A stretch of DNA of 64,000 nt, from IMG/VR virus record IMGVR_UViG_3300046536_000256, positions 124,001 to 188,000 of that record, one strand, 5' to 3'. The translations under genes were made by a program, and so were the position numbers. Numbering within the stretch: the first letter of the stretch is position 1; each line of letters opens with the position of its first letter. This document shows positions 22,852 to 31,465 of the stretch, piece after piece. The notes beneath the pieces were generated by a model, which searched no databases, had not been told where the DNA came from, and saw only the letters and a program-made list of their open reading frames with translations.

Positions 22852-23586
22852 TCAGGCCTTCTTCGGTTTCTTGATAACCAGACCAGCTTCTTGGTCCATG
22901 AGGTCCCGCGCAGCCAACGCCAACCGTTCCGCTTCTAGTACCAGTTCTTTGGCAGTAAGAGGGGTCTTTGGTTTCTCGTCTGCTTGATCAAGACTGGACT
23001 TGATTGCATCGGCTACCGCCGTTTCCAGATCTGTCTTGGTAAACACCGGTTCCGGTTCCGCCTTGGGTGGACGAGTGCTCATTACTTCAGGCACCCCCGG
23101 GAATACCCACGTCTGAACTGACCCGCCACTGTGGTTGTCCAAACGAATGGCTTGTTTAACAGCGTCTACAGCTGTCGCCCCAACCGACATCACCGCGGTG
23201 GCAATGGTTTGCCCGCTGCCCGCTGCACAAGGCCCAGTAATAGCACTGAGGATCACAGTGTTACGCTGGTGCCGATGACTACGAGACAGTCCCCAGTACC
23301 AAGCTTGCCCGTTCTCGGTCACCGCCAGAATTACAAAATCAGACTCTGGCAAATCTTCCAGCCGTGTACGGTGAGTAACCCCGATCTCGAGTTCCTCTTT
23401 TATCCACGGCAGCATATCAATCTCACCAGCCAATGCAAAGGCCAGCACTTTGACACCCTGGATTTCCCAGTATTCGTTTCCAGTGGGTGTAAAAATCTTT
23501 TGATGATCAGCCAGCATCGCAACGTTTTGTTGCGAGCACTTGGAGTCAGAAGCCAGTGTCGCCATATCCCAGCAAATTGTAGTCAT
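22852..23586 (-). CDS. Ntn-hydrolase, HslV/proteasome-beta-like peptidase, paralog with a helical C-terminal extension
   Basis: MTTICWD..LASDS, QKI, ALAG, AAGSG and LDNHSGG; aligns by eye with 22313-22849. Confidence 0.8.
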   Translation of the reverse strand: MTTICWDMATLASDSKCSQQNVAMLADHQKIFTPTGNEYWEIQGVKVLAFALAGEIDMLPWIKEELEIGVTHRTRLEDLPESDFVILAVTENGQAWYWGLSRSHRHQRNTVILSAITGPCAAGSGQTIATAVMSVGATAVDAVKQAIRLDNHSGGSVQTWVFPGVPEVMSTRPPKAEPEPVFTKTDLETAVADAIKSSLDQADEKPKTPLTAKELVLEAERLALAARDLMDQEAGLVIKKPKKA

Positions 23587-23670: not shown

Positions 23671-23687
23671 GTAATATAGGTTTCAAT
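23671..23687 (-). promoter_or_regulatory. Early promoter motif ATTGAAACCTATATTAC
   Basis: CCTATATTAC core upstream of the peptidase operon. Confidence 0.68.
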
Positions 23688-23953: not shown

Positions 23954-24799
23954 ATGAACTGCGTCGATTACGCAATCAATAGGGTGATGGGGTCCGACAT
24001 TGATGATTACCTCTTCAAGCTCGCATTCGAAAACCCAAACGCCAACTACAACGGTAACTGGTACAACGTCCAAGGCGCTACCACTACCCCGCAAGGTATC
24101 CGGGAACAAGTGATCTTCCGTACCGTTCTCCCGGCTTGTAACGTGGGCGGCGGTAAAACCGAGTTCGTCGATCTGTCTGGTGCGAAGATGATGGACAAGG
24201 GTAACGGCTGTGTGGAAGTTAACGTACCCGACATTGCTACAGGTGGTCGCAAGATTATCTCGGTCAATGAAGTGTACCTGGGCAGCATGACGTCCGCGAC
24301 TGGTATGCTGGGTATGGGGATGAACGACGGGACTGACTGCGGCCAAGGTTCCATCAGCGACATGATGCAGGGCTTGATCGACGGTTTAACCCCAAGCCGC
24401 TCCATGCCGCACACCTACACCAATGTGCACATGACGGGCAACAACAGCTTTGTTATCTTCGGGCTGAACTCCGGCACCTTCTCCATGACGGCCAAGTGCA
24501 TCTTGGAATACGACCAAGGGTTGTCCAGCATTCACCCGCGCCACTACGAGCAGTTTGCCGAGCTGGTTGAATTGGCGGTGAAGGCTTACATCTATCGGAA
24601 GTGCCGCCGTGCGACTAACGAGGCCGTAATCCGCGCCGGTGTCCCGTTGCAGGACATCAAAGACGATATCCAGGCTTACAGCGACGCATGGACTCAATAC
24701 AAAGAGTACTTCGGCGACACCTGGAAACGTTGCATGGCTTGGTCTGATCGTCAACTGGTGCAAGACACTACCCGCATGAGCGTACCCCGCCGCATGTAA
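23954..24799 (+). CDS. Conserved hypothetical protein, probably virion structural
   Basis: 281 aa, GGGAG SD, TATG late-promoter-like motif at about 23915. Confidence 0.75.
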   Translation: MNCVDYAINRVMGSDIDDYLFKLAFENPNANYNGNWYNVQGATTTPQGIREQVIFRTVLPACNVGGGKTEFVDLSGAKMMDKGNGCVEVNVPDIATGGRKIISVNEVYLGSMTSATGMLGMGMNDGTDCGQGSISDMMQGLIDGLTPSRSMPHTYTNVHMTGNNSFVIFGLNSGTFSMTAKCILEYDQGLSSIHPRHYEQFAELVELAVKAYIYRKCRRATNEAVIRAGVPLQDIKDDIQAYSDAWTQYKEYFGDTWKRCMAWSDRQLVQDTTRMSVPRRM

Positions 24800-24810
24800 G
24801 GAATCCCCTC

Positions 24811-26247
24811 ATGTTGAAAGAACAGTATAACCCGTCGGACTTCAACTACGCCGAAGAAGAGGAACGACTCTACCACGAACAAAACAACGTCTTCAGTTTG
24901 TTCGAAGGCCTGGACAAACACAGCTACCTGGCACAACAAGGTTTGTACCTGGAACCCCTGCACCTTGGTGAAGTCCAATCAGTGACTGGTGCTGAGGCAT
25001 TGCTTACTGGTGTGAACTTTGAAAGCAACGGTGCCATCATGGCCGTCTGCAATCGGTTCGGTGGTGACTTGGACCCTACACCTAAGTGGGCCGGTGTTTT
25101 GCGTCGTTACGTGTACAGCTTCATCACCCGGCGTGTCGGGATGGTGGACTACATGGAGTTCTTTGGTAGCCCGTACTTGGGGTTGCAGAAGATCACTTTC
25201 ACCACGGCTGATCGGAACCAATGGTTCAGTGAGATCTTCGACGTGGACGAAGAGGAACTCAAAGAGAACCTGCACGCCTGCAAAGCGATCAACACTGAGT
25301 GGTCGGTAGTAGGCGACGTGTTCAACCTGACGGTTCCATTCCTGCTGTACAAGGTGTACCACAGCAAGCTGGACCAGAAGACCAAACACCAGGCCTTGAT
25401 CGATATCCTCTGCATGTACCACTACAAGTGCCTGACCTCCATCATTCACAACGACTACCCATTCCAGGCGCGTCGTGAAGTGGTGTTGGAAACCTACAAC
25501 CGCCTGAGTCTGAAATACGACATCAAGCGTTACGGTAGCTGGCGTGCCTTGATTGAAGCCCGGGCTGAGTTCATTCTTAACCCGAAGACAGGTATCCACT
25601 TCGACGCTTACACCAAAATGGATGACGATAAAAAGATTGTCTACATGGTCGGCGATATCCAGAACCGCTTGCGTCGGGCGATCAACGACATCAACAAGGT
25701 GTTCCACGAGGTCAAGACTCAGACCAACATCGTGAAGCTGGACAGCTCGAAGGTGAACCTTGGGGATGAATTGACGATCAAGTCGGTTACCAAGGAAGTC
25801 ACCCAATACGGGTTGTACATCGACCGGGTATTGACCGAGGAAACCTCGTTCTACAAGGAAGAGCTGGCTGGGTTTGCCGCGAGTGTCCTGGAGAACGTGC
25901 CTCGGGACAAGCTGGCTTTCATTATTCAAACCTTCCCGCAAGTGTACAAGAACGCTAAGAAGCCCCACTATAAGGAGTTTACTGACGCGGTCTTGATTCA
26001 CTTGTTCGAATACCTATACACCAATGGTATCAAGAAGACCAATGTGTACGACGTACTTACCAAGATGCGTGGCGCCTACGGTGCTCCTCGGAGTAAGAAC
26101 GATACGGTTAAAGTCATCCGCGCTTTGGGCGACGAGATCGTTGTGGAACAGACCGGGGTTAAAACACCTCAAACGGTTACGGTACTGCGCACCGCTCTGA
26201 GTCTGTACTTCGTGCTACGGATTCTTTCAAAAGAATATTTCGACTAG
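24811..26247 (+). CDS. Conserved jumbo-phage protein of unknown function
   Basis: 478 aa, AAGGA SD, typical codon bias. Confidence 0.82.
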   Translation: MLKEQYNPSDFNYAEEEERLYHEQNNVFSLFEGLDKHSYLAQQGLYLEPLHLGEVQSVTGAEALLTGVNFESNGAIMAVCNRFGGDLDPTPKWAGVLRRYVYSFITRRVGMVDYMEFFGSPYLGLQKITFTTADRNQWFSEIFDVDEEELKENLHACKAINTEWSVVGDVFNLTVPFLLYKVYHSKLDQKTKHQALIDILCMYHYKCLTSIIHNDYPFQARREVVLETYNRLSLKYDIKRYGSWRALIEARAEFILNPKTGIHFDAYTKMDDDKKIVYMVGDIQNRLRRAINDINKVFHEVKTQTNIVKLDSSKVNLGDELTIKSVTKEVTQYGLYIDRVLTEETSFYKEELAGFAASVLENVPRDKLAFIIQTFPQVYKNAKKPHYKEFTDAVLIHLFEYLYTNGIKKTNVYDVLTKMRGAYGAPRSKNDTVKVIRALGDEIVVEQTGVKTPQTVTVLRTALSLYFVLRILSKEYFD

Positions 26248-26256
26248 GAGAGTTAC

Positions 26257-26589
26257 ATGGAACGCTTTCAAGATGACGCTGTTAAAGTACTGGTTCAAAC
26301 CGACAGCATTGTGGCGGGGAAAACCATTCTGCAACACGGCAGTGGCAAAGAAGCCTCGGAGACCGAGGTGTACGTACTGATCCGTCTGGAAGACGACAAC
26401 CGTCGTTACTACTCCAGCTCGGTTGTATCCAAAGCGGCTTTCCGCGAGATCACCGAGAACAAGGCGACCTTCGAAACCCTGACAACCAACTTCAACGGTC
26501 GCAGCAAAGGCGACATGATCACGTTCTTGGCCAAGAACTACATCGCACCGAAGGTTGTTGCCGAACAGCCCGAAACCGAAGCAGCCTGA
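26257..26589 (+). CDS. Hypothetical protein
   Basis: 110 aa, AGGAG SD. Confidence 0.78.
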   Translation: MERFQDDAVKVLVQTDSIVAGKTILQHGSGKEASETEVYVLIRLEDDNRRYYSSSVVSKAAFREITENKATFETLTTNFNGRSKGDMITFLAKNYIAPKVVAEQPETEAA

Positions 26590-26590
26590 C

Positions 26591-27262
26591 ATGACCGTCG
26601 ATATCAGTAAGTACCTCATCGCAACACCGCTGCCAGTCTCTGATACGAACCCGGTAGCATTGGAACTCATGGGCGCTGAAGCACTCGTGTTGTGTCCTGA
26701 CGTGATCGCCCAGTTGCCTGATGGGTCGGTCCAGATGAGCGCCCCTACTAAAGGCGCCTCCAGCAAAAGCACCCACCGCACTCGCTGCGAATGGAAAGAG
26801 CCTGAGTATTGGGCATTGGCCAGCGCCGAGCGCCACTGGAGTCGTCAAGAGTTGATGGTGACTAAGGTCAACTCCGCCTTGAAGGTAGTCGTCGGACAGA
26901 TCCATGTCAAAGACGCCACCACCCCACCGCTGAAAGTGTTCTGGAACAAAGGCAAGATCACCATCGGTTTCCGCGCTAGCTTTGAAAGCGCCGAGATCTA
27001 CAACGCGGTGATTCACGACGATGTTCCGCTGGGTGTGAAGTTTAAGCTCAGCATCGGGGTTACCTCCTCCGGTACGGTCTCGGTCAATGTCCTGTGTAAG
27101 GGTGTGTCCTCGGTCAAGACCTCACTGCGTCTGGGTGACTCTTGGCAAGACAAGGTACTCCAGTTCCACGGTGGTTTGTATAACCAGGTCGATTACACCG
27201 AGAACACCCTGCCGTACGACGGTTCGGTTTGCATCCTCAGTGAGCTGACCACTACGCATTGA
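26591..27262 (+). CDS. Polysaccharide lyase family 7 (alginate-lyase-like)
   Basis: PL7 motifs: RCEWKE (RxExR-like), GQIH, and QFHGGLYNQ (YFKAGxYxQ-like). Start ATG 26591; no signal peptide. Confidence 0.8.
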   Translation: MTVDISKYLIATPLPVSDTNPVALELMGAEALVLCPDVIAQLPDGSVQMSAPTKGASSKSTHRTRCEWKEPEYWALASAERHWSRQELMVTKVNSALKVVVGQIHVKDATTPPLKVFWNKGKITIGFRASFESAEIYNAVIHDDVPLGVKFKLSIGVTSSGTVSVNVLCKGVSSVKTSLRLGDSWQDKVLQFHGGLYNQVDYTENTLPYDGSVCILSELTTTH

Positions 27263-27278
27263 GCAAAAGGAATGCTGC

Positions 27279-27821
27279 ATGTCCTACGTCCTTGTCAACA
27301 GTTCCAGCTTACAAGTCGCTGAGCAAGCCGCGTGTGATATCAAGGCTAAGCTTCACTTGAACTTCGGTCGTCGTTCCATCATCGTTCGTGATTTCATGTC
27401 GGAAACCGAACGGGGTCAAGCGATGTATGCCGAAATCACCAAGAAAAACGTCCGAGGTGCGCGCGCTCTTGCGATCATCCTGGAACAGCGCAAGGCTTTG
27501 ATTAAACAAGTCATCCTCCCTGCGGTTGATAAGGGTATTGTGGTGATCTACGTGGGTGGTGTACTTGACGACACGCGGTATGTCAAGACCCTTGAGTTTC
27601 ACGAGATCCTCAAGGAAAACCAAGAGATGCTGCAAAGCATTGGTGGACATACCTACCCTCTTGGGGCGGTGTACGCGAAGTGCGTTATGGATTCCCCTAA
27701 CACCAGTCGGGGGTACAACAAGCGTGTGGACCGTATGTTGCAAAGCATGGCCGGGTTGAAGCTGATTGGCTACGACCCGAGCTACAACACCATGAACAAG
27801 ATCAACAGCTTGTTTGGCTGA
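27279..27821 (+). CDS. Hypothetical protein, degenerate thymidylate-kinase-like
   Basis: 180 aa; RKALIKQVILPAVDKGIVVI parallels RAQHVALKIRPALQEGKVVI of Tmk; no P-loop. Confidence 0.6.
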   Translation: MSYVLVNSSSLQVAEQAACDIKAKLHLNFGRRSIIVRDFMSETERGQAMYAEITKKNVRGARALAIILEQRKALIKQVILPAVDKGIVVIYVGGVLDDTRYVKTLEFHEILKENQEMLQSIGGHTYPLGAVYAKCVMDSPNTSRGYNKRVDRMLQSMAGLKLIGYDPSYNTMNKINSLFG

Positions 27822-27830
27822 GGGAACAGT

Positions 27831-28106
27831 ATGAGCCTGACGAACCTTAAAACTATCGAGCGTGACAACAGCCTTGCATTGCTAGAAGTACAGATGAACC
27901 CAACGTCGGCTTGGTTGCTTATTCCGCTCGACACCCCACCCGACCATACAGGGGTGATTGATTTCAGCAATGAGAACTATCGCTTCTACCTCGACATGAA
28001 CATCGCCCGCGACGCCTTCTGTAAGGCTGGCAAGGGAATCGAGTTGGTCGGGAAGTGGAAAGGTACTCGTTGGGCTGATATGAAGCCGTTCTTAGTTTCG
28101 CATTGA
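27831..28106 (+). CDS. Hypothetical protein
   Basis: 91 aa, GAGGG SD. Confidence 0.72.
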   Translation: MSLTNLKTIERDNSLALLEVQMNPTSAWLLIPLDTPPDHTGVIDFSNENYRFYLDMNIARDAFCKAGKGIELVGKWKGTRWADMKPFLVSH

Positions 28107-28116
28107 TTCAAACATA

Positions 28117-28156
28117 CCCCTTACCCTGTCCCCGTAATGGAGGCAGGGTAAGGGGG
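28117..28156. terminator. Bidirectional terminator between convergent genes
   Basis: CCCCTTACCCTG...CAGGGTAAGGGG, flanked by TATG(T) tails on both strands. Confidence 0.75.
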
Positions 28157-28165
28157 TTATGTCCG

Positions 28166-31100
28166 CTATGCCGCTCTTTTGAGTTGCAGGATACGTTTGC
28201 TGCGTTCGAACTTGGCTTGTTCAAGCAGGCTATCGACTGTCATGAGACGCGATTGTTCAGGCGGCAGGACTTTGCCCAGCTTCCTGATTTCCGCTTCCAG
28301 ACGCATCGCTAGGATGTTGTCGTTGGTCGCCATCAGTTCTTCGGTCAAAGCATCCACTCGCGCTTTCACTTTGTCCATGAACTGAACCACATGCGGCTCA
28401 AACTCCTGAGCCTTACGACCATTGGCCCTGTCCAACAAGTTCTTGGTATCAGTGAGTGCAATGCCACCCTGAATCCCGTACAGCGACTTGTTAGCCCCCA
28501 GCTTGATAAACCAGTACGTCAGCAGCCAACCAATTACCAAGTCATCGTGCTTCTTGGCATCGTGGTCGATTCGATCGCCCTTAGTCCGCAGGTTGATCAA
28601 CTCGTCCGCCAGCCTGTCGTAGTTCAAGCCATACGCCGTCATCCCTACCGCTTCCTGAATCAGACCGTAAAGAACTTCACGCGATCTGGAGGTGGTGTTG
28701 AAACCGAAGTATTGCTTGTACTTCAGGTAGAAGTCCTTGTAACGATAAGCAAACTTGGTGCCTTGTACTTCCTTGTACTCTTTCTCGTACGTCACGGTGT
28801 CTTGGTAGATCTGGTTGAAGATACGGGTGAATGGGTCCATCCCTTTCGCTGGCAGCATGATCAACAGGTTATCGATCATGTGGTGAGCATAGTTGCGCTC
28901 AATCACCAGGAGGCTATTGTCCAGCACTTGCAACAGGTCCACGATAATGGCTGTCACGTCGTCCAGGAACGCCAGTGGGTAACGACCCACCCCGATTACC
29001 TTGCCAGTCCGCATACTGCGAATGATGATGGTGCAGGCGTCCTTGTTGATAGCCGAGGACGTATCCACCCCAATCAAGAAGAAGTCGTTGTACTCCTTCT
29101 TACCCATTCGGATCAACTCTTCCTGGGTACAGAAGAAGTCCATGAACAGACCACTCTCCCGATACTCCTTACTCCAGACCACCGAGTTCTTGCAGTTGTT
29201 GATTGCTTCCCGTGTGATGTCGTCGAACAGTCGGTTCTCCCCGTCTTCCACCCACATGAGGAGTAAGTCGATCTTCGCCTTGGCAAGGCTGAGGTTAAGG
29301 GAGTCGATGGTTTCTTTGACCCAGTCTTTGTCTTTACCCAACTGCATGTAGTTGTAGACCATGGCAATCGAGGGACTGGTGGTCGTCTTCGGAGACGCTC
29401 GCAACAAACGTTCCCGCAGATGACTCTCGCTAAACGAATCAAAGAACTTCTCACGCCATTCCGTCGAGGACATCAACTTCTCGAACATGAACTCACCACT
29501 TGGGTGCAGGGTCGTGTTCGGGGTCGTAATGAAACTGATCCCGTACGGTTTACCCTGTGTCCTGGCGTTAGCCATCGCGGTCAGTGCGGAAGGCGCGCAG
29601 CCGTTGATGATCTCTTCAATGAAGCTGATGTACGCCGGTTCGTCGTAAGTCGTGGTCTCAACGGTAAGACCCCGTCCCAAGTCACCTGCTGCGTCACGAC
29701 CCATCTGAGGAACGTTAATGTTGAGTGTGTTGACATACTCATCACCAAAGGCCTTGTAGTTGAGGTAGTTACCTGAGTCCTTGTCTCGCCAAGTGGGGTT
29801 CACCAAGTAAGACGGCATACAAGTTCGGATCTTCTTGATGGCGTCAATGAACTGCGCCCGGTTATCCGACTTCAACGTAATGAGGTGAGACTTATACCCT
29901 CGCCCGTTGATGTAGGTTAACCAGAAGTTGATCACCTGCACCGACACCGTGTTGTGCGTGACAATGAAGTCATCGGTGATGTACAGGTGTTCTTGGTTGT
30001 CGACTTCGATGCAGGTTGCTTCGTCATCACCACAGAACTCAATCTTCTCAACCCAGAGCCGGTTGTCCACTTCAGGACGCTTGTCTTTACGGAAACGGAA
30101 ATACTCCATCTCCTTAGGCAGCGAGACCGTCAGGGTTTCCTTCTCTGGCTTGGCAGTGCCACCCAGACTTCTGACCACGTAGGCCAGCTGAGACGCTATA
30201 AGCGCGTTAGGCGCCTTTAAGGTCAAAGTCTTACCGATCTTCAGTCCTTCATCGAAAAACGCCTGTAGCAGCTTTAGGCGATCCTCCTGAGCCCCTTCGA
30301 GGTAGGTTGCCGGAAGCCCTACGTTTAAATCAAAGTCAAAAGGTTTCCCGTCACGACGTTTGATCGTGCGGAACTTCTTGTCCTGAGCGACCGCCAGTGT
30401 TTGAGGGATAATCGAGTTCAGGAAAGCGTCTTGTTCCTTACCCAGAGTACGACCTTTCAACACACCGTCGGTTAACTGGGAGTTGATCATGCAACCGATC
30501 AGATACGGGTCCAGAGTAAAACGTTGAGCCTTACCTTTCTCCGAACGAATCAGAGGAAGTTCAAACGCATGACCTTTAGCCATCGCAGAGATCAGATCCG
30601 CGGTGGTGTAGTCATCCGTAATCCCTCGACGACTGGCGGTACCCCGTGAGAAGTCCTTCAGGGTCCACAGGTGCTCAGCACCCACATCCGTAGAACGACC
30701 GTCGCTCATGGTCACTCGGTACAGACGCAACACCCCTTGTGGGTGAATCCCGATCACGTTAGTGGTCTTACCGAAGCGATCCATCAACACATCACCGGTA
30801 CGCAGGTCCCCAATCTTCTTCCACGTATCAGCCGGAGTGATGTTACCGATCCGTTCCGTCTTCACCCGAACCTTGCTCGAGTTACGTTGCATCTTGCCTT
30901 GCTGTCTCGGCATGATCATGTAAGTGGTCACATGATTCAAGTAGTTCCAGATAAAGCTGATGTTACCGCGGTTAGCCATAAACGCTTGTTCTGGCTTCAA
31001 CCGGCACACTTCGCGGAGGAAGTACCAGAAGTTAACCCGACACTCTTCAGCGACCATCAGTTTCTGTTCGTTGGTCAGGTCCGGAGAGTAAGGGTCCACG

Positions 31101-31465
31101 CCCTGCAACATCCGGTTGTTCAGTTGCAGTAGGAAGTAATAGTTCTTAATCCCTTGCTGCCGGAAGATCTCCGCGGTACGGATGAAACTTGCGTTGGGAG
31201 TCTTCAGGTCCGGTGCTGCTTTGTAACGATAAAAGTCTTTCAGAAAGCGAACCGTCTTAATGCTGTGCAGACTGTCTTCTTCGAAGTGAGCCATCAAGGT
31301 CTCTTCTTCGGAACGCGCTTCAGAGTCTATACGTTTTTCACGGTCATCGATTAGTTTCTTGGGGAGGTTCTGGGCTCCCAGGTAATTCACCAGTTTCTTG
31401 GCGAACTCCAGTACCTTGGCATAACCTTCGGCAACTGGCGCTTCAGTTTCAGTAGCGTCAGACAT
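28166..31465 (-). CDS. terL: Terminase large subunit precursor containing an intein
   Basis: NFWYFLRE, Walker A PRQQGK|T split by the intein, GRG, Walker B TTYDE, ITTP coupling motif, and nuclease motifs IGVDTS, VIERN and HDDLV. Confidence 0.93.
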   Translation of the reverse strand: MSDATETEAPVAEGYAKVLEFAKKLVNYLGAQNLPKKLIDDREKRIDSEARSEEETLMAHFEEDSLHSIKTVRFLKDFYRYKAAPDLKTPNASFIRTAEIFRQQGIKNYYFLLQLNNRMLQGVDPYSPDLTNEQKLMVAEECRVNFWYFLREVCRLKPEQAFMANRGNISFIWNYLNHVTTYMIMPRQQGKMQRNSSKVRVKTERIGNITPADTWKKIGDLRTGDVLMDRFGKTTNVIGIHPQGVLRLYRVTMSDGRSTDVGAEHLWTLKDFSRGTASRRGITDDYTTADLISAMAKGHAFELPLIRSEKGKAQRFTLDPYLIGCMINSQLTDGVLKGRTLGKEQDAFLNSIIPQTLAVAQDKKFRTIKRRDGKPFDFDLNVGLPATYLEGAQEDRLKLLQAFFDEGLKIGKTLTLKAPNALIASQLAYVVRSLGGTAKPEKETLTVSLPKEMEYFRFRKDKRPEVDNRLWVEKIEFCGDDEATCIEVDNQEHLYITDDFIVTHNTVSVQVINFWLTYINGRGYKSHLITLKSDNRAQFIDAIKKIRTCMPSYLVNPTWRDKDSGNYLNYKAFGDEYVNTLNINVPQMGRDAAGDLGRGLTVETTTYDEPAYISFIEEIINGCAPSALTAMANARTQGKPYGISFITTPNTTLHPSGEFMFEKLMSSTEWREKFFDSFSESHLRERLLRASPKTTTSPSIAMVYNYMQLGKDKDWVKETIDSLNLSLAKAKIDLLLMWVEDGENRLFDDITREAINNCKNSVVWSKEYRESGLFMDFFCTQEELIRMGKKEYNDFFLIGVDTSSAINKDACTIIIRSMRTGKVIGVGRYPLAFLDDVTAIIVDLLQVLDNSLLVIERNYAHHMIDNLLIMLPAKGMDPFTRIFNQIYQDTVTYEKEYKEVQGTKFAYRYKDFYLKYKQYFGFNTTSRSREVLYGLIQEAVGMTAYGLNYDRLADELINLRTKGDRIDHDAKKHDDLVIGWLLTYWFIKLGANKSLYGIQGGIALTDTKNLLDRANGRKAQEFEPHVVQFMDKVKARVDALTEELMATNDNILAMRLEAEIRKLGKVLPPEQSRLMTVDSLLEQAKFERSKRILQLKRAA
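29951..30892 (-). mobile_element. Intein (314 aa) with a class-3 WCT signature and a degenerate LAGLIDADG endonuclease
   Basis: Inserted at GK|T. Starts MQRNSSKV, block B GAEHLW, block F ATCIEVD, ends FIVTHN with +1 Thr. Endonuclease remnants DPYLIG, LLQAFFDEG and VVRSLGG. Confidence 0.9.

What the first reader, a model, noticed from the sequence alone, without database searches (positions are those of the whole stretch)
26591..27262. Stand-alone PL7 alginate-lyase-like gene in a late-type operon
Seen: QIH and the terminal Tyr motif are retained; the usual YFKAG reads QFHGG; there is no signal peptide or tail-fibre fusion. Knowledge: PL7 enzymes cleave alginate, the exopolysaccharide of mucoid pseudomonads, while most phage depolymerases are tail-spike beta-helices. 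Inference: a host-derived soluble depolymerase released at lysis to open biofilm. It also points to a Pseudomonas host.
Basis: partly seen in the sequence, partly recalled or inferred. Interest (0 to 1): 0.6.

Follow-up and report, generated by a model that had tools for sequence, protein, structure and literature searches.

The report
Soluble alginate-lyase-like gene in jumbo phage
A nucleus-forming giant phage from a rhizosphere sample, probably infecting Pseudomonas, carries a small free-standing enzyme gene of the alginate-lyase family PL7 with its catalytic residues intact; the gene is real and under selection, but it is a new member of a known enzyme family, already named as such in a related phage.

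Summary
Window 26591-27262 (+) encodes a 223-aa protein that matches Pfam Alginate_lyase2 (PL7) end to end (E 2.9e-38). It folds with high confidence as a PL7 jelly roll (TM 0.83 to PA1167). It keeps the four catalytic residues: R65, Q103, H105 and Y197. It has no signal peptide and no fused domain.

QFHGG in place of YFKAG is not private decay. It marks a whole subfamily (RTRxEW / QxH / FHGGxYNQ), found here only in Pseudomonas genomes and prophages, and in about 24 jumbo-phage contigs including phage Psa21.

The jumbo-phage copies form one clade under purifying selection (dN/dS about 0.13). They are 62-75% identical to the window's protein, while core genes of the same phages are 28-40% identical or undetectable by pairwise search. 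This points to horizontal spread among distant chimalliviruses.

The window phage is EL-like. The gene lies in an accessory slot between a conserved virion-gene pair and the terminase gene, with no early-promoter motif upstream.

A Pseudomonas host is well supported. "Host-derived" is favoured but not proven (AU p = 0.12). "Alginate" and "released at lysis" remain inferences.

Verdict: new member of a known kind, moderate-to-low interest.

The parts
26591..27262 (+). PL7 (Alginate_lyase2) gene, 223 aa, single domain, no signal peptide
   Evidence: Pfam PF08787 E 2.9e-38, full length. phrog_31475. AF2 model pLDDT 95.2. Foldseek best match PA1167 1vav, TM 0.83. Only one PF08787 copy in the 233-kb genome.
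26777..26797 (+). Codons for R63-T-R65-C-E67-W-K69, the counterpart of the PL7 RxExR block. R65 is the catalytic or neutralising Arg; the second Arg is replaced by Lys69.
   Evidence: Alignments to PA1167 and A1-II'. R63, T64, R65, E67 and W68 are invariant in 39 homologues.
26897..26905 (+). Codons for Q103-I-H105, the PL7 QxH block. H105 corresponds to His191 of A1-II'.
   Evidence: The H191N mutant chain 2zaa fixes the register. Q103 and H105 are invariant.
27161..27187 (+). Codons for Q191-F-H193-G-G-L-Y197-N-Q199, the counterpart of YFKAGxYxQ. Y197 corresponds to the catalytic Tyr284 of A1-II'.
   Evidence: The Y284F mutant chains 2zab and 2zac fix the register. F192, H193, G194, G195, Y197, N198 and Q199 are invariant; position 191 varies among Q, A, E, N, D and G.
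23954..24799 (+). First gene of the same-strand cluster: DUF7484, homologue of phiKZ gp42 (portal adaptor) and of EL gp14
   Evidence: Pfam DUF7484 E 1.5e-84. tblastn hit on PHIKZ042. gp42 is the dodecameric adaptor in PMC13250141. EL gene order.
24811..26247 (+). Second cluster gene: phrog_2921, homologue of EL gp13, annotated as a virion or head structural protein in several relatives
26257..26589 (+). orf110, unknown function. Its stop lies one base before the PL7 start, so translational coupling is likely.
   Evidence: Homologues in syntenic contigs L013 and L020 at 70-82%.
27279..27821 (+). orf180, thymidylate-kinase-like fold, accessory gene downstream of PL7
   Evidence: Atlas structure search TM 0.77-0.80 to dTMP-kinase clusters. 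No Pfam hit.
27831..28106 (+). orf91, unknown function, last gene of the cluster, convergent with the terminase gene
23671..23680 (-). Early-promoter-like motif CCTATATTAC. It serves the divergent HslV-like gene (22852-23586, -), not the PL7 cluster.
   Evidence: Motif enriched about 20-fold in upstream regions genome-wide, including upstream of the chimallin gene. No copy on the + strand between 23.9 and 28.1 kb.
28166..31465 (-). Large terminase subunit (1099 aa, probably with an intein), convergent on the cluster. It marks the conserved border of the accessory slot.
   Evidence: phrog_2. 77% identical to EL gp11 over the C-terminal part.

Best explanation
The gene encodes a catalytically competent, endo-type PL7 polysaccharide lyase of a Pseudomonas-specific subfamily. 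Its most likely substrate is the host's alginate (M/MG-type, possibly O-acetylated). It is translated in the cytoplasm of the infected cell, probably together with late virion genes, and it has no export signal and no virion-anchoring domain. It would therefore reach its substrate only when the cell lyses, and would then thin the surrounding alginate matrix so that the very large progeny virions can diffuse to new cells.

Shown: PL7 sequence and fold; an intact Arg/Gln/His/Tyr catalytic set; no signal peptide or fusion; purifying selection; restriction of the subfamily to Pseudomonas and its phages; location in an accessory slot of a late-looking gene cluster.

Inferred: the substrate, the timing of expression, the soluble non-virion status, and the benefit for spread.
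For: - **Family and fold:** Pfam PL7 full-length match. AF2 model pLDDT 95.2. Top structural matches are all PL7 lyases: PA1167 TM 0.83 and A1-II' TM 0.81.
- **Catalytic residues:** R65, Q103, H105 and Y197 align with R146, Q189, H191 and Y284 of A1-II', with the register fixed by mutant chains. They are invariant in 39 homologues and kept in distant phage relatives.
- **Selection:** dN/dS median 0.13 across jumbo-phage copies. Twenty-four intact copies of 222-227 aa form one clade.
- **No leader:** the N-terminus is part of the fold.
- **Host link:** 49 hits in the GTDB-wide pattern scan, 48 of them named Pseudomonas. About 26 of 301 sampled Pseudomonadaceae carry the type. None of 400 other genomes in an even sample of the class matched at E<=1e-30.
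- **Known parallel:** the nearest solved relative, PA1167, is itself a small PL7 alginate lyase (polyMG-preferring per PMC8829089); its 222-residue PDB chain suggests it also lacks a leader.
- **Expression context:** gaps of 1-16 nt between the six cluster genes. The first gene is the portal-adaptor homologue. There is no early-promoter motif on this strand.
- **Distant relative:** in phage AH02 a PL7-like gene sits next to an esterase and two genes before the holin.
- **Other enzymes:** neither the beta-helix pectate-lyase family (PF12708) nor the GDSL esterase family (PF13472) is detectable in the genome.
Against: - No biochemical data exist for any member of this subfamily.
- Two residues that contact substrate in studied PL7 enzymes are changed. 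The Lys four residues before the catalytic Tyr is His193, and the second Arg of RxExR is Lys69 (roles from PMC11920209 and PMC10811132). Specificity could therefore differ from alginate.
- PL7 also contains glucuronan lyases (7nde).
- No transcript or proteome data: only DNA runs hold the sequence.
- phiKZ-type late promoters are only a TATG, so the late class cannot be read from sequence (PMC7598289).
- The neighbouring thymidylate-kinase-like gene is not a typical late gene.
- Virion association is not excluded.
Confidence: 0.55

Rival explanations
1. The enzyme is a true lyase, but its substrate is another uronic-acid polymer of Pseudomonas or its surroundings (for example a glucuronan-like polymer or a uronate-containing O-antigen or capsule), not alginate.
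For: The substrate-contacting Lys of YFKAG is replaced by an invariant His. The second Arg of RxExR is Lys, Ser or Thr across the subfamily. Residues at the minus subsites are said to set specificity in PL7 (PMC11920209). A PL7 glucuronan lyase (7nde) is among the structural matches. Pseudomonas genomes that carry this type also carry a separate PA1167-type PL7, which would fit a division of substrates.
Against: Almost all characterised PL7 enzymes cleave alginate. The closest solved structure is the P. aeruginosa alginate lyase PA1167. Alginate is, to my knowledge, the main 4-linked polyuronate made across the fluorescens, putida and syringae groups (not tested here). Both QIH and QVH variants occur in the clade, as in alginate lyases (PMC8618178).
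Confidence: 0.17
2. The protein is virion-associated, either packaged in the head or bound to the tail, and acts at adsorption to clear the exopolysaccharide in front of the incoming phage.
For: It follows two genes whose homologues are virion proteins. phiKZ-like virions carry many proteins (my own knowledge, not tested here). In P. putida jumbo phages a PL7-like gene lies next to a gene annotated as minor tail protein.
Against: It is a bare 223-aa catalytic domain with no anchoring or trimerisation module, and its N-terminus is buried in the fold. Its genomic place differs between jumbo lineages and is even inverted within the same slot. In Psa21 it lies among tRNA and HNH genes. In prophages it lies in the immunity or early-left region. 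None of this is typical of structural genes.
Confidence: 0.12
3. The protein works inside the cell or in the lysogen, not as a lysis-released matrix enzyme. Examples would be trimming alginate oligomers, switching off the host's alginate coat as a conversion function, or a role unrelated to polysaccharide.
For: No member has a signal peptide. In the mandelii/fluorescens group the gene sits between a cI-like S24 repressor and the recombination genes of lambdoid prophages. It also occurs as a repressor-orf96-PL7 remnant beside a candidate defence gene. These are slots typical of lysogen-expressed or early accessory genes.
Against: No 4-linked polyuronate substrate is known in the cytoplasm (my own knowledge). 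The catalytic set is invariant, which argues for real lyase chemistry. There is no PADLOC match. In the window phage, which is virulent-type, the gene rides with late-looking genes.
Confidence: 0.12
4. The gene is a neutral passenger picked up from the host gene pool and has no role in the phage life cycle.
For: It lies in a variable accessory slot that holds only one small ORF in phage EL. EL-group isolates lack it.
Against: There are 24 intact copies in jumbo contigs with dN/dS about 0.13. Composition is ameliorated (Psa21 copy 41.7% GC in a 41.9% locus). The gene is retained across chimallivirus lineages whose core proteins are barely alignable.
Confidence: 0.04

Closest known systems
PA1167 of Pseudomonas aeruginosa (PDB 1VAV), a PL7 alginate lyase, and its paralogue PA1784
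   Same: Same size (222-223 aa). A single PL7 beta-jelly-roll domain, TM 0.83. Same Arg/Gln/His/Tyr catalytic set and QIH block. From Pseudomonas. The full-length 222-residue PDB chain suggests it also lacks a signal peptide.
   Different: Only about 24% identical (E 7e-7 pairwise). PA1167 has canonical RSELR and YFKAG; this protein has RCEWK and QFHGG. It is a separate paralogous lineage: the P. migulae genome carries both types, at 403 and 51 bits. PA1167 activity has been measured; this subfamily's has not.
PSA21_405 of Pseudomonas phage Psa21, annotated 'polysaccharide lyase family 7 protein'
   Same: Same subfamily and same jumbo-phage clade, 62% identical over the full length, with the same motifs. 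Psa21 is also a jumbo phage of Pseudomonas.
   Different: Different genomic setting: among tRNA and HNH genes near one genome end. Psa21 belongs to a different jumbo-phage genus (Tepukevirus; the window phage is EL-like). No function has been tested, to my knowledge.
A1-II' of Sphingomonas sp. A1 (PDB 2CWS, 2Z42, 2ZAA-2ZAC), the mechanistic reference PL7
   Same: Fold (TM 0.81) and the four catalytic residues, with the register verified through the mutant chains.
   Different: About 18% identity. A1-II' comes from an alginate-assimilating bacterium. Its substrate-contact Lys and second Arg are not kept here.
Classical phage exopolysaccharide depolymerases (tailspike or tail-fibre beta-helix enzymes)
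   Same: The presumed job: cutting the host's exopolysaccharide to help the phage move through it.
   Different: Those are large trimeric beta-helix proteins built into the virion with an N-terminal anchor. This is a 24-kDa monomer-sized jelly roll with no anchor. No beta-helix pectate-lyase domain is detectable in the genome.
PL7-like genes of P. putida jumbo phages (vB_PpuM-Peetri and relatives) and of the temperate-type phage AH02
   Same: The Arg, QxH and FHxGxYNQ signature is kept. All are Pseudomonas phages.
   Different: Only 30-40% identical. AH02's protein has a C-terminal extension of about 60 aa and sits beside an esterase and the lysis genes. Peetri's sits beside genes annotated as a minor tail protein and a 'lipase'.

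Membership tests
Polysaccharide lyase family 7 (Pfam PF08787 Alginate_lyase2) | Significant full-length sequence similarity to the PL7 catalytic module | tested here: met
   132.4 bits against a cut-off of 29.7, E 2.9e-38, profile positions 1-225 of 225.
Polysaccharide lyase family 7 (Pfam PF08787 Alginate_lyase2) | Beta-jelly-roll fold with a substrate cleft, as in PA1167 and A1-II' | tested here: met
   AF2 model pLDDT 95.2, pTM 0.91. Foldseek TM 0.83 and 0.81; the first 41 matches listed are PL7 entries.
Polysaccharide lyase family 7 (Pfam PF08787 Alginate_lyase2) | Catalytic Arg, Gln, His and Tyr (R146, Q189, H191, Y284 in A1-II') | tested here: met
   R65, Q103, H105 and Y197. The register is fixed by the H191N and Y284F chains. 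All four are invariant in 39 homologues.
Polysaccharide lyase family 7 (Pfam PF08787 Alginate_lyase2) | Canonical consensus blocks RxExR, QxH and YFKAGxYxQ (descriptive consensus, not the criterion of membership) | tested here: inconclusive
   QIH and the Y-N-Q end are kept. RxExR reads R-C-E-W-K and YFKAG reads Q-F-H-G-G. The variant is constant across the subfamily. NCBI names the homologues 'polysaccharide lyase family 7 protein'.
Polysaccharide lyase family 7 (Pfam PF08787 Alginate_lyase2) | Beta-eliminative cleavage of alginate or another polyuronate | not testable with these tools
   Needs an enzyme assay. No characterised member of this subfamily was found in the literature searches.
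CAZy PL7 subfamilies PL7_1 to PL7_6 | Placement in one of the six curated subfamilies | not tested
   No dbCAN or CAZy subfamily models were on hand. The six subfamilies are listed in PMC10811132.
PA1167/PA1784-type Pseudomonas PL7 lyases | Orthology or close similarity (the two share 47% identity with each other) | tested here: not met
   24% identity, E 7e-7. One Pseudomonas genome holds both types at 403 and 51 bits. Scores in 301 Pseudomonadaceae genomes fall into two main classes, at or above 286 bits and at or below about 83 bits, with a few intermediate hits at 130-216 bits.
Virion-borne phage depolymerases (tailspikes) | Beta-helix catalytic domain joined to a virion-anchoring N-terminal domain | tested here: not met
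   Single jelly-roll domain of 223 aa. No PF12708 domain in the genome.
Late (non-virion RNA polymerase) transcription unit of a chimallivirus | No early vRNAP promoter motif, and co-transcription with structural genes | tested here: inconclusive
   There is no CCTATATTAC-type motif on the + strand of the cluster. The genes are tightly spaced and the first is the adaptor homologue. Late promoters cannot be recognised from sequence (PMC7598289), and no RNA data exist.

The most novel reading that the evidence does not exclude
A Pseudomonas-restricted PL7 subfamily (RTRxEW / QxH / FHGGxYNQ) is a mobile accessory gene of the Pseudomonas virome. On this reading it has moved horizontally between deeply divergent nucleus-forming jumbo phages and the immunity regions of lambdoid prophages. 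It would be kept because a freely diffusing matrix lyase, released at lysis or on SOS induction, offsets the poor diffusion of very large virions through alginate. That would be a soluble 'public-good' depolymerase strategy, distinct from tailspike enzymes. The His-for-Lys change might tune it to acetylated bacterial alginate.
Probability: 0.3. Interest if true: 0.55.

Novelty: new member of a known kind. Interest (0 to 1): 0.3.

Why it matters
If the enzyme is active on Pseudomonas alginate, it would be a small, soluble, easily expressed phage lyase already adapted to bacterial alginate, which is acetylated and lacks G-blocks. That is of practical interest for work on biofilms of plant-associated and clinical pseudomonads.

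Biologically, the gene is retained and exchanged among distant chimalliviruses and temperate Pseudomonas phages. This suggests that matrix degradation by non-virion enzymes is a recurrent and little-studied part of phage spread.

For annotation, the gene is a useful host marker: it ties an uncultivated 233-kb rhizosphere phage to Pseudomonas.

The family itself is known, and the homologue in Psa21 is already labelled PL7, so the finding extends existing knowledge rather than opening a new category.

Tried and rejected
- **NCBIfam and PADLOC:** no family for the protein or its small neighbours.
- **Degenerate-motif idea:** I considered that QFHGG marks a decaying or inactive copy. This is rejected because the variant is constant in all 120 homologues, the catalytic residues are invariant, and dN/dS is low.
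- **PA1167/PA1784 orthologue:** rejected.
- **IMG/VR contigs of 20-60 kb:** I first took them for host flanks. Context shows many are lambdoid prophages with the gene between the cI-like repressor and RecT/YqaJ. P. putida-group copies lie among ordinary chromosomal genes.
- **AU test:** the run on the full 115-row tree did not finish in two attempts. It was replaced by a 41-row set.
- **Chimallin in other jumbo contigs:** a pairwise search with the window's chimallin nearly failed. The PHROG profile found chimallin in all five contigs tested.
- **Promoter and terminator scan:** the sigma-70 scan was uninformative, as expected for a phage with its own RNA polymerases.
- **Expression data:** no RNA runs hold the sequence.
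- **Terminase:** Pfam finds nothing in it.
- **Not used:** the large representative-protein search, since the family was not left open and absence was tested through genome samples instead; complex prediction, since no binding claim is made.
Full report
**1. The observation**

The reported ORF exists as described. It starts with ATG at 26591, one base after the TGA of the upstream ORF (26257-26589). It ends with TGA at 27260-27262 and encodes 223 aa. A longer TTG-initiated reading from 26555 is listed mechanically, but all 120 database homologues begin at the M-x-V-D-I-S position, so 26591 is the real start.

Pfam PF08787 (Alginate_lyase2, the PL7 catalytic module) matches from end to end at 132 bits against a cut-off of 29.7, E 2.9e-38. 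It is the only such domain in the 233-kb genome.

- QIH at residues 103-105.
- Q-F-H-G-G-L-Y-N-Q at residues 191-199, where canonical PL7 has YFKAGxYxQ.

**2. Fold and catalytic residues**

An AlphaFold2 model built on 39 homologues is confident (pLDDT 95.2, pTM 0.91). Foldseek against the PDB returns PL7 lyases: PA1167 of P. aeruginosa first (TM 0.83, 24% identity), then A1-II' of Sphingomonas (TM 0.81), among the first 41 matches listed.

A profile of the homologues was searched against PDB sequences. It aligns the family to wild-type A1-II' and to its H191N and Y284F mutant chains. The substituted letters fall exactly opposite the family's His and Tyr, which fixes the register. The mapping is:

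| Window residue | A1-II' residue |
|---|---|
| R65 | R146 |
| Q103 | Q189 |
| H105 | H191 |
| Y197 | Y284 |

All four residues are invariant in the 39-sequence alignment. They are also kept in the distant phage relatives Peetri and AH02.

Residues 9-27 form two strands of the jelly roll, and the N-terminus has no basic or hydrophobic leader. There is therefore no signal peptide and no room for one. The protein is a single domain with no fusion.

**3. What QFHGG means**

QFHGG is not a private degeneration. All 120 closest database proteins, from phages and from bacteria, carry RxEW(K/S/T), Q(I/V)H and xFHGGxYNQ. His193 and Gly194 are invariant, while position 191 varies.

In studied PL7 enzymes the two Arg and the Gln bind the C5 carboxylates at subsites +1 and +3. 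The Lys four residues before the catalytic Tyr contacts the sugar at a minus subsite, and those minus-subsite contacts are thought to set specificity (PMC11920209; PMC10811132). So the catalytic machinery is intact, but two substrate contacts are systematically different. The family is a distinct PL7 lineage whose exact substrate preference is unknown.

It is not the PA1167/PA1784 lineage, whose two members are 47% identical to each other (PMC8829089):
- Pairwise similarity to PA1167 is only E 7e-7.
- A P. migulae genome holds both types, at 403 and 51 bits.
- Scores across 301 Pseudomonadaceae genomes fall into two main classes, at or above 286 bits and at or below about 83 bits. A few hits are intermediate at 130-216 bits.

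**4. Who else has it**

- **Isolate phages.** Only 12 records match: Psa21 (62%, already annotated "polysaccharide lyase family 7 protein"), nine P. putida jumbo phages (about 38%) and AH02 (30%). All are Pseudomonas phages.
- **IMG/VR.** There are 65 loci. About 24 lie on jumbo-type viral contigs, the longest reaching 315 kb, at 62-75% identity. About 40 lie on smaller contigs (most 20-60 kb) at 57-61%.
- **Bacterial genomes.** In one genome per GTDB species, 49 loci match at 49-63% identity. Forty-eight are named Pseudomonas (fluorescens, mandelii, putida and syringae groups, and P. jinjuensis). One is labelled Pantoea but sits inside the putida-group clade.
- **Profile search of whole genomes.** The type is present in about 26 of 301 sampled Pseudomonadaceae. 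It was found in none of 400 other genomes in an even sample of the class at E<=1e-30.

**5. Phylogeny and mobility**

In a 115-row tree and in a careful 41-row tree, the jumbo-phage copies form one clade (SH-aLRT 99; UFBoot/SH-aLRT 98/99). This clade lies in a polytomy with two Pseudomonas clades, and P. jinjuensis is basal.

That topology favours an origin of the phage clade inside the Pseudomonas gene pool. Three cautions apply:
- The AU test does not reject placing the phage clade outside all Pseudomonas copies (delta lnL 7.2, p = 0.12).
- The outgroups are long-branched phage sequences.
- treekit flags a possible long-branch artefact.

The direction of transfer is therefore favoured, not shown.

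Composition gives little help. The gene has 55.4% GC against 51.9 +/- 2.4% for the phage's genes (93rd percentile). The Psa21 copy is fully ameliorated.

Selection is clearly purifying, with a median dN/dS of 0.13.

Several jumbo records with PL7 at 68-74% identity share only 28-40% identity with the window in terminase and in a virion protein. Their chimallin is found only by profile, not by pairwise search. The lyase is thus far more similar than the core genes, which indicates horizontal spread among distantly related chimalliviruses that presumably share Pseudomonas hosts.

**6. The phage and the local context**

The window is part of a complete 233,283-bp IMG/VR record with terminal repeats, recovered from rhizosphere metagenomes. 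It encodes a nuclear-shell protein and PhuZ tubulin, so it is a chimallivirus. Its terminase is 77% identical to that of the EL group of P. aeruginosa phages, 78% to vB_PQ1 (Pseudomonas sp.) and 66% to Erwinia phages RisingSun and Joad.

Gene order is colinear with EL: PhuZ, HslV-like, gp14 (DUF7484), gp13 (phrog_2921), gp12, terminase gp11, virion protein gp9. Where EL has only the 98-aa gp12, the window has four genes: orf110, PL7, a thymidylate-kinase-like orf180 and orf91. The lyase therefore lies in an accessory insertion slot.

Among nine syntenic metagenomic relatives the slot always holds the lyase, but with varying companions. In two of them the lyase is inverted. In the other jumbo lineages the gene is elsewhere; in Psa21 it lies among tRNA and HNH genes.

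**7. Is it a late-type operon?**

- The six + strand genes 23954-28106 are separated by 11, 9, 1, 16 and 9 nt.
- The first gene is the homologue of phiKZ gp42, the dodecameric portal adaptor in the phiKZ cryo-EM atlas (PMC13250141).
- The second gene is annotated as a virion or head protein in several relatives.
- De novo k-mer enrichment over all upstream regions of the genome yields an AT-rich motif, aaaCCTATATTAC. It precedes the chimallin gene and other minus-strand genes, as expected of the early vRNAP promoters described for each RNAP-encoding jumbo phage (PMC7598289).
- The 367-bp divergent region upstream of the cluster has one copy, on the minus strand, serving the HslV-like gene. The cluster itself has none.
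- Late promoters of phiKZ are only TATG, so a late class cannot be proven from sequence.

"Late-type" is plausible but inferred.

**8. Bacterial and prophage context**

In the mandelii/fluorescens clade the gene typically lies in lambdoid prophages. It sits between a cI-like HTH-S24 repressor and the RecT/YqaJ recombination genes, with cro, pRha and lambda-P-like genes on the other strand (L123). In many species representatives it occurs as a repressor-orf96-PL7 remnant, in P. migulae next to a candidate TIR defence gene.

In the P. putida group it is flanked by ordinary chromosomal genes. In Pseudomonas sp. 681 it lies beside a DUF2252 gene.

The "host" pool from which the jumbo phages may have drawn the gene is therefore itself partly viral.

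**9. Mechanism proposed**

The most likely reading is a soluble endo-type PL7 lyase made in the infected cytoplasm. It cannot reach any polyuronate until lysis, and it then degrades the alginate around the burst cell.

The rationale that very large virions diffuse poorly in gels, and so gain most from such an enzyme, is my inference and not a result.

Several points support the alginate reading:
- The family itself.
- The nearest solved structure, PA1167 (polyMG-preferring).
- The occurrence of both QIH and QVH forms within the clade. A loose and often-broken rule links these forms to MG/G versus M preference (PMC8618178).
- The position of the distant AH02 homologue, beside an esterase and the lysis cassette.

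Neither the beta-helix pectate-lyase family (PF12708) nor the GDSL esterase family (PF13472) is detectable in this genome.

The rivals are another uronate polymer as substrate, virion association, an intracellular or lysogen role, and a neutral passenger. They are weighed in the structured fields.

**10. Novelty and verdict**

The protein meets the sequence, fold and catalytic-residue criteria of PL7. It departs from the textbook motif strings in a subfamily-wide way, and no member of the subfamily has been assayed. The Psa21 homologue already carries the PL7 label.

This is a new member of a known kind. It has three modestly interesting features: a Pseudomonas-restricted subfamily signature, horizontal spread among divergent nucleus-forming phages, and a recurrent place in prophage immunity regions.

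Its interpretation is partly supported: host inference yes; soluble, non-tailspike character yes; host origin, substrate and timing not shown.

Noticed in passing
window 28166-31465 (-): The large terminase is 1099 aa. Terminase profiles match only residues 24-197 and the C-terminal part. Residues 208-330 hit families that often carry inteins (phrog_50, phrog_510), and a T-H-N/T junction is visible. EL gp11 is equally long. This is probably an intein in the ATPase domain. Pfam finds nothing.
   Followed up: partly
window 27279-27821 (+): orf180, directly downstream of the lyase, has a thymidylate-kinase-like predicted fold (TM 0.77-0.80 to dTMP-kinase clusters) but no Pfam hit. By eye its N-terminus shows no canonical P-loop.
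   Followed up: partly
window 13001, 20691, 23671, 42373, 43577, 49234, 53794 (all - strand), plus other sites in G000: A genome-wide AT-rich motif, aaaCCTATATTAC, lies 20-105 nt upstream of minus-strand genes, including the chimallin and HslV-like genes. It is most likely the early (virion RNA polymerase) promoter of this phage.
   Followed up: partly
G000 upstream regions, e.g. window 20926 region and genome 25514-26953, 30350-31288, 72171-73307: The octamer TATGTTTG, often just after a GC-rich hairpin, recurs upstream of about ten genes. It is a candidate terminator-plus-late-promoter unit containing the phiKZ-type TATG.
   Followed up: no
L123:4400-12503; L030, L033, L040 and others: In Pseudomonas lambdoid prophages the same PL7 subfamily sits between the cI-like S24 repressor and the RecT/YqaJ genes. 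This is the slot where lysogen-expressed or early accessory genes usually lie.
   Followed up: partly
L084:3973-8029: In P. migulae a repressor (HTH_3 + Peptidase_S24), a 96-aa ORF and the PL7 gene form a small island. It lies next to a 413-aa CAP12/Pycsar-type TIR protein that matches the PADLOC candidate PDC-S35.
   Followed up: partly
L003:4505-8034 (phage AH02) and L002:6001-12308 (phage Peetri): Distant PL7-like genes keep company with possible deacetylases. In AH02 the order is aminohydrolase, 'alginate lyase', esterase, one small ORF, then holin. In Peetri the neighbours are annotated as a minor tail protein and an 850-aa 'lipase'.
   Followed up: no
L008:4643-6669 and L016:4643-6669 versus window 26591-29500: Within the same terminase-to-phrog_2921 slot, the lyase gene is inverted in two related jumbo contigs. 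There it is co-directional with the terminase, which suggests cassette-like rearrangement.
   Followed up: no
window 26591-27262 versus L013 and L020: In the closest syntenic genomes the flanking proteins are 84-92% identical to the window's, but the lyase is only 68-73% identical. It is closest (75%) to copies in less related genomes (L006/L065). This points to faster evolution or exchange of the lyase.
   Followed up: no
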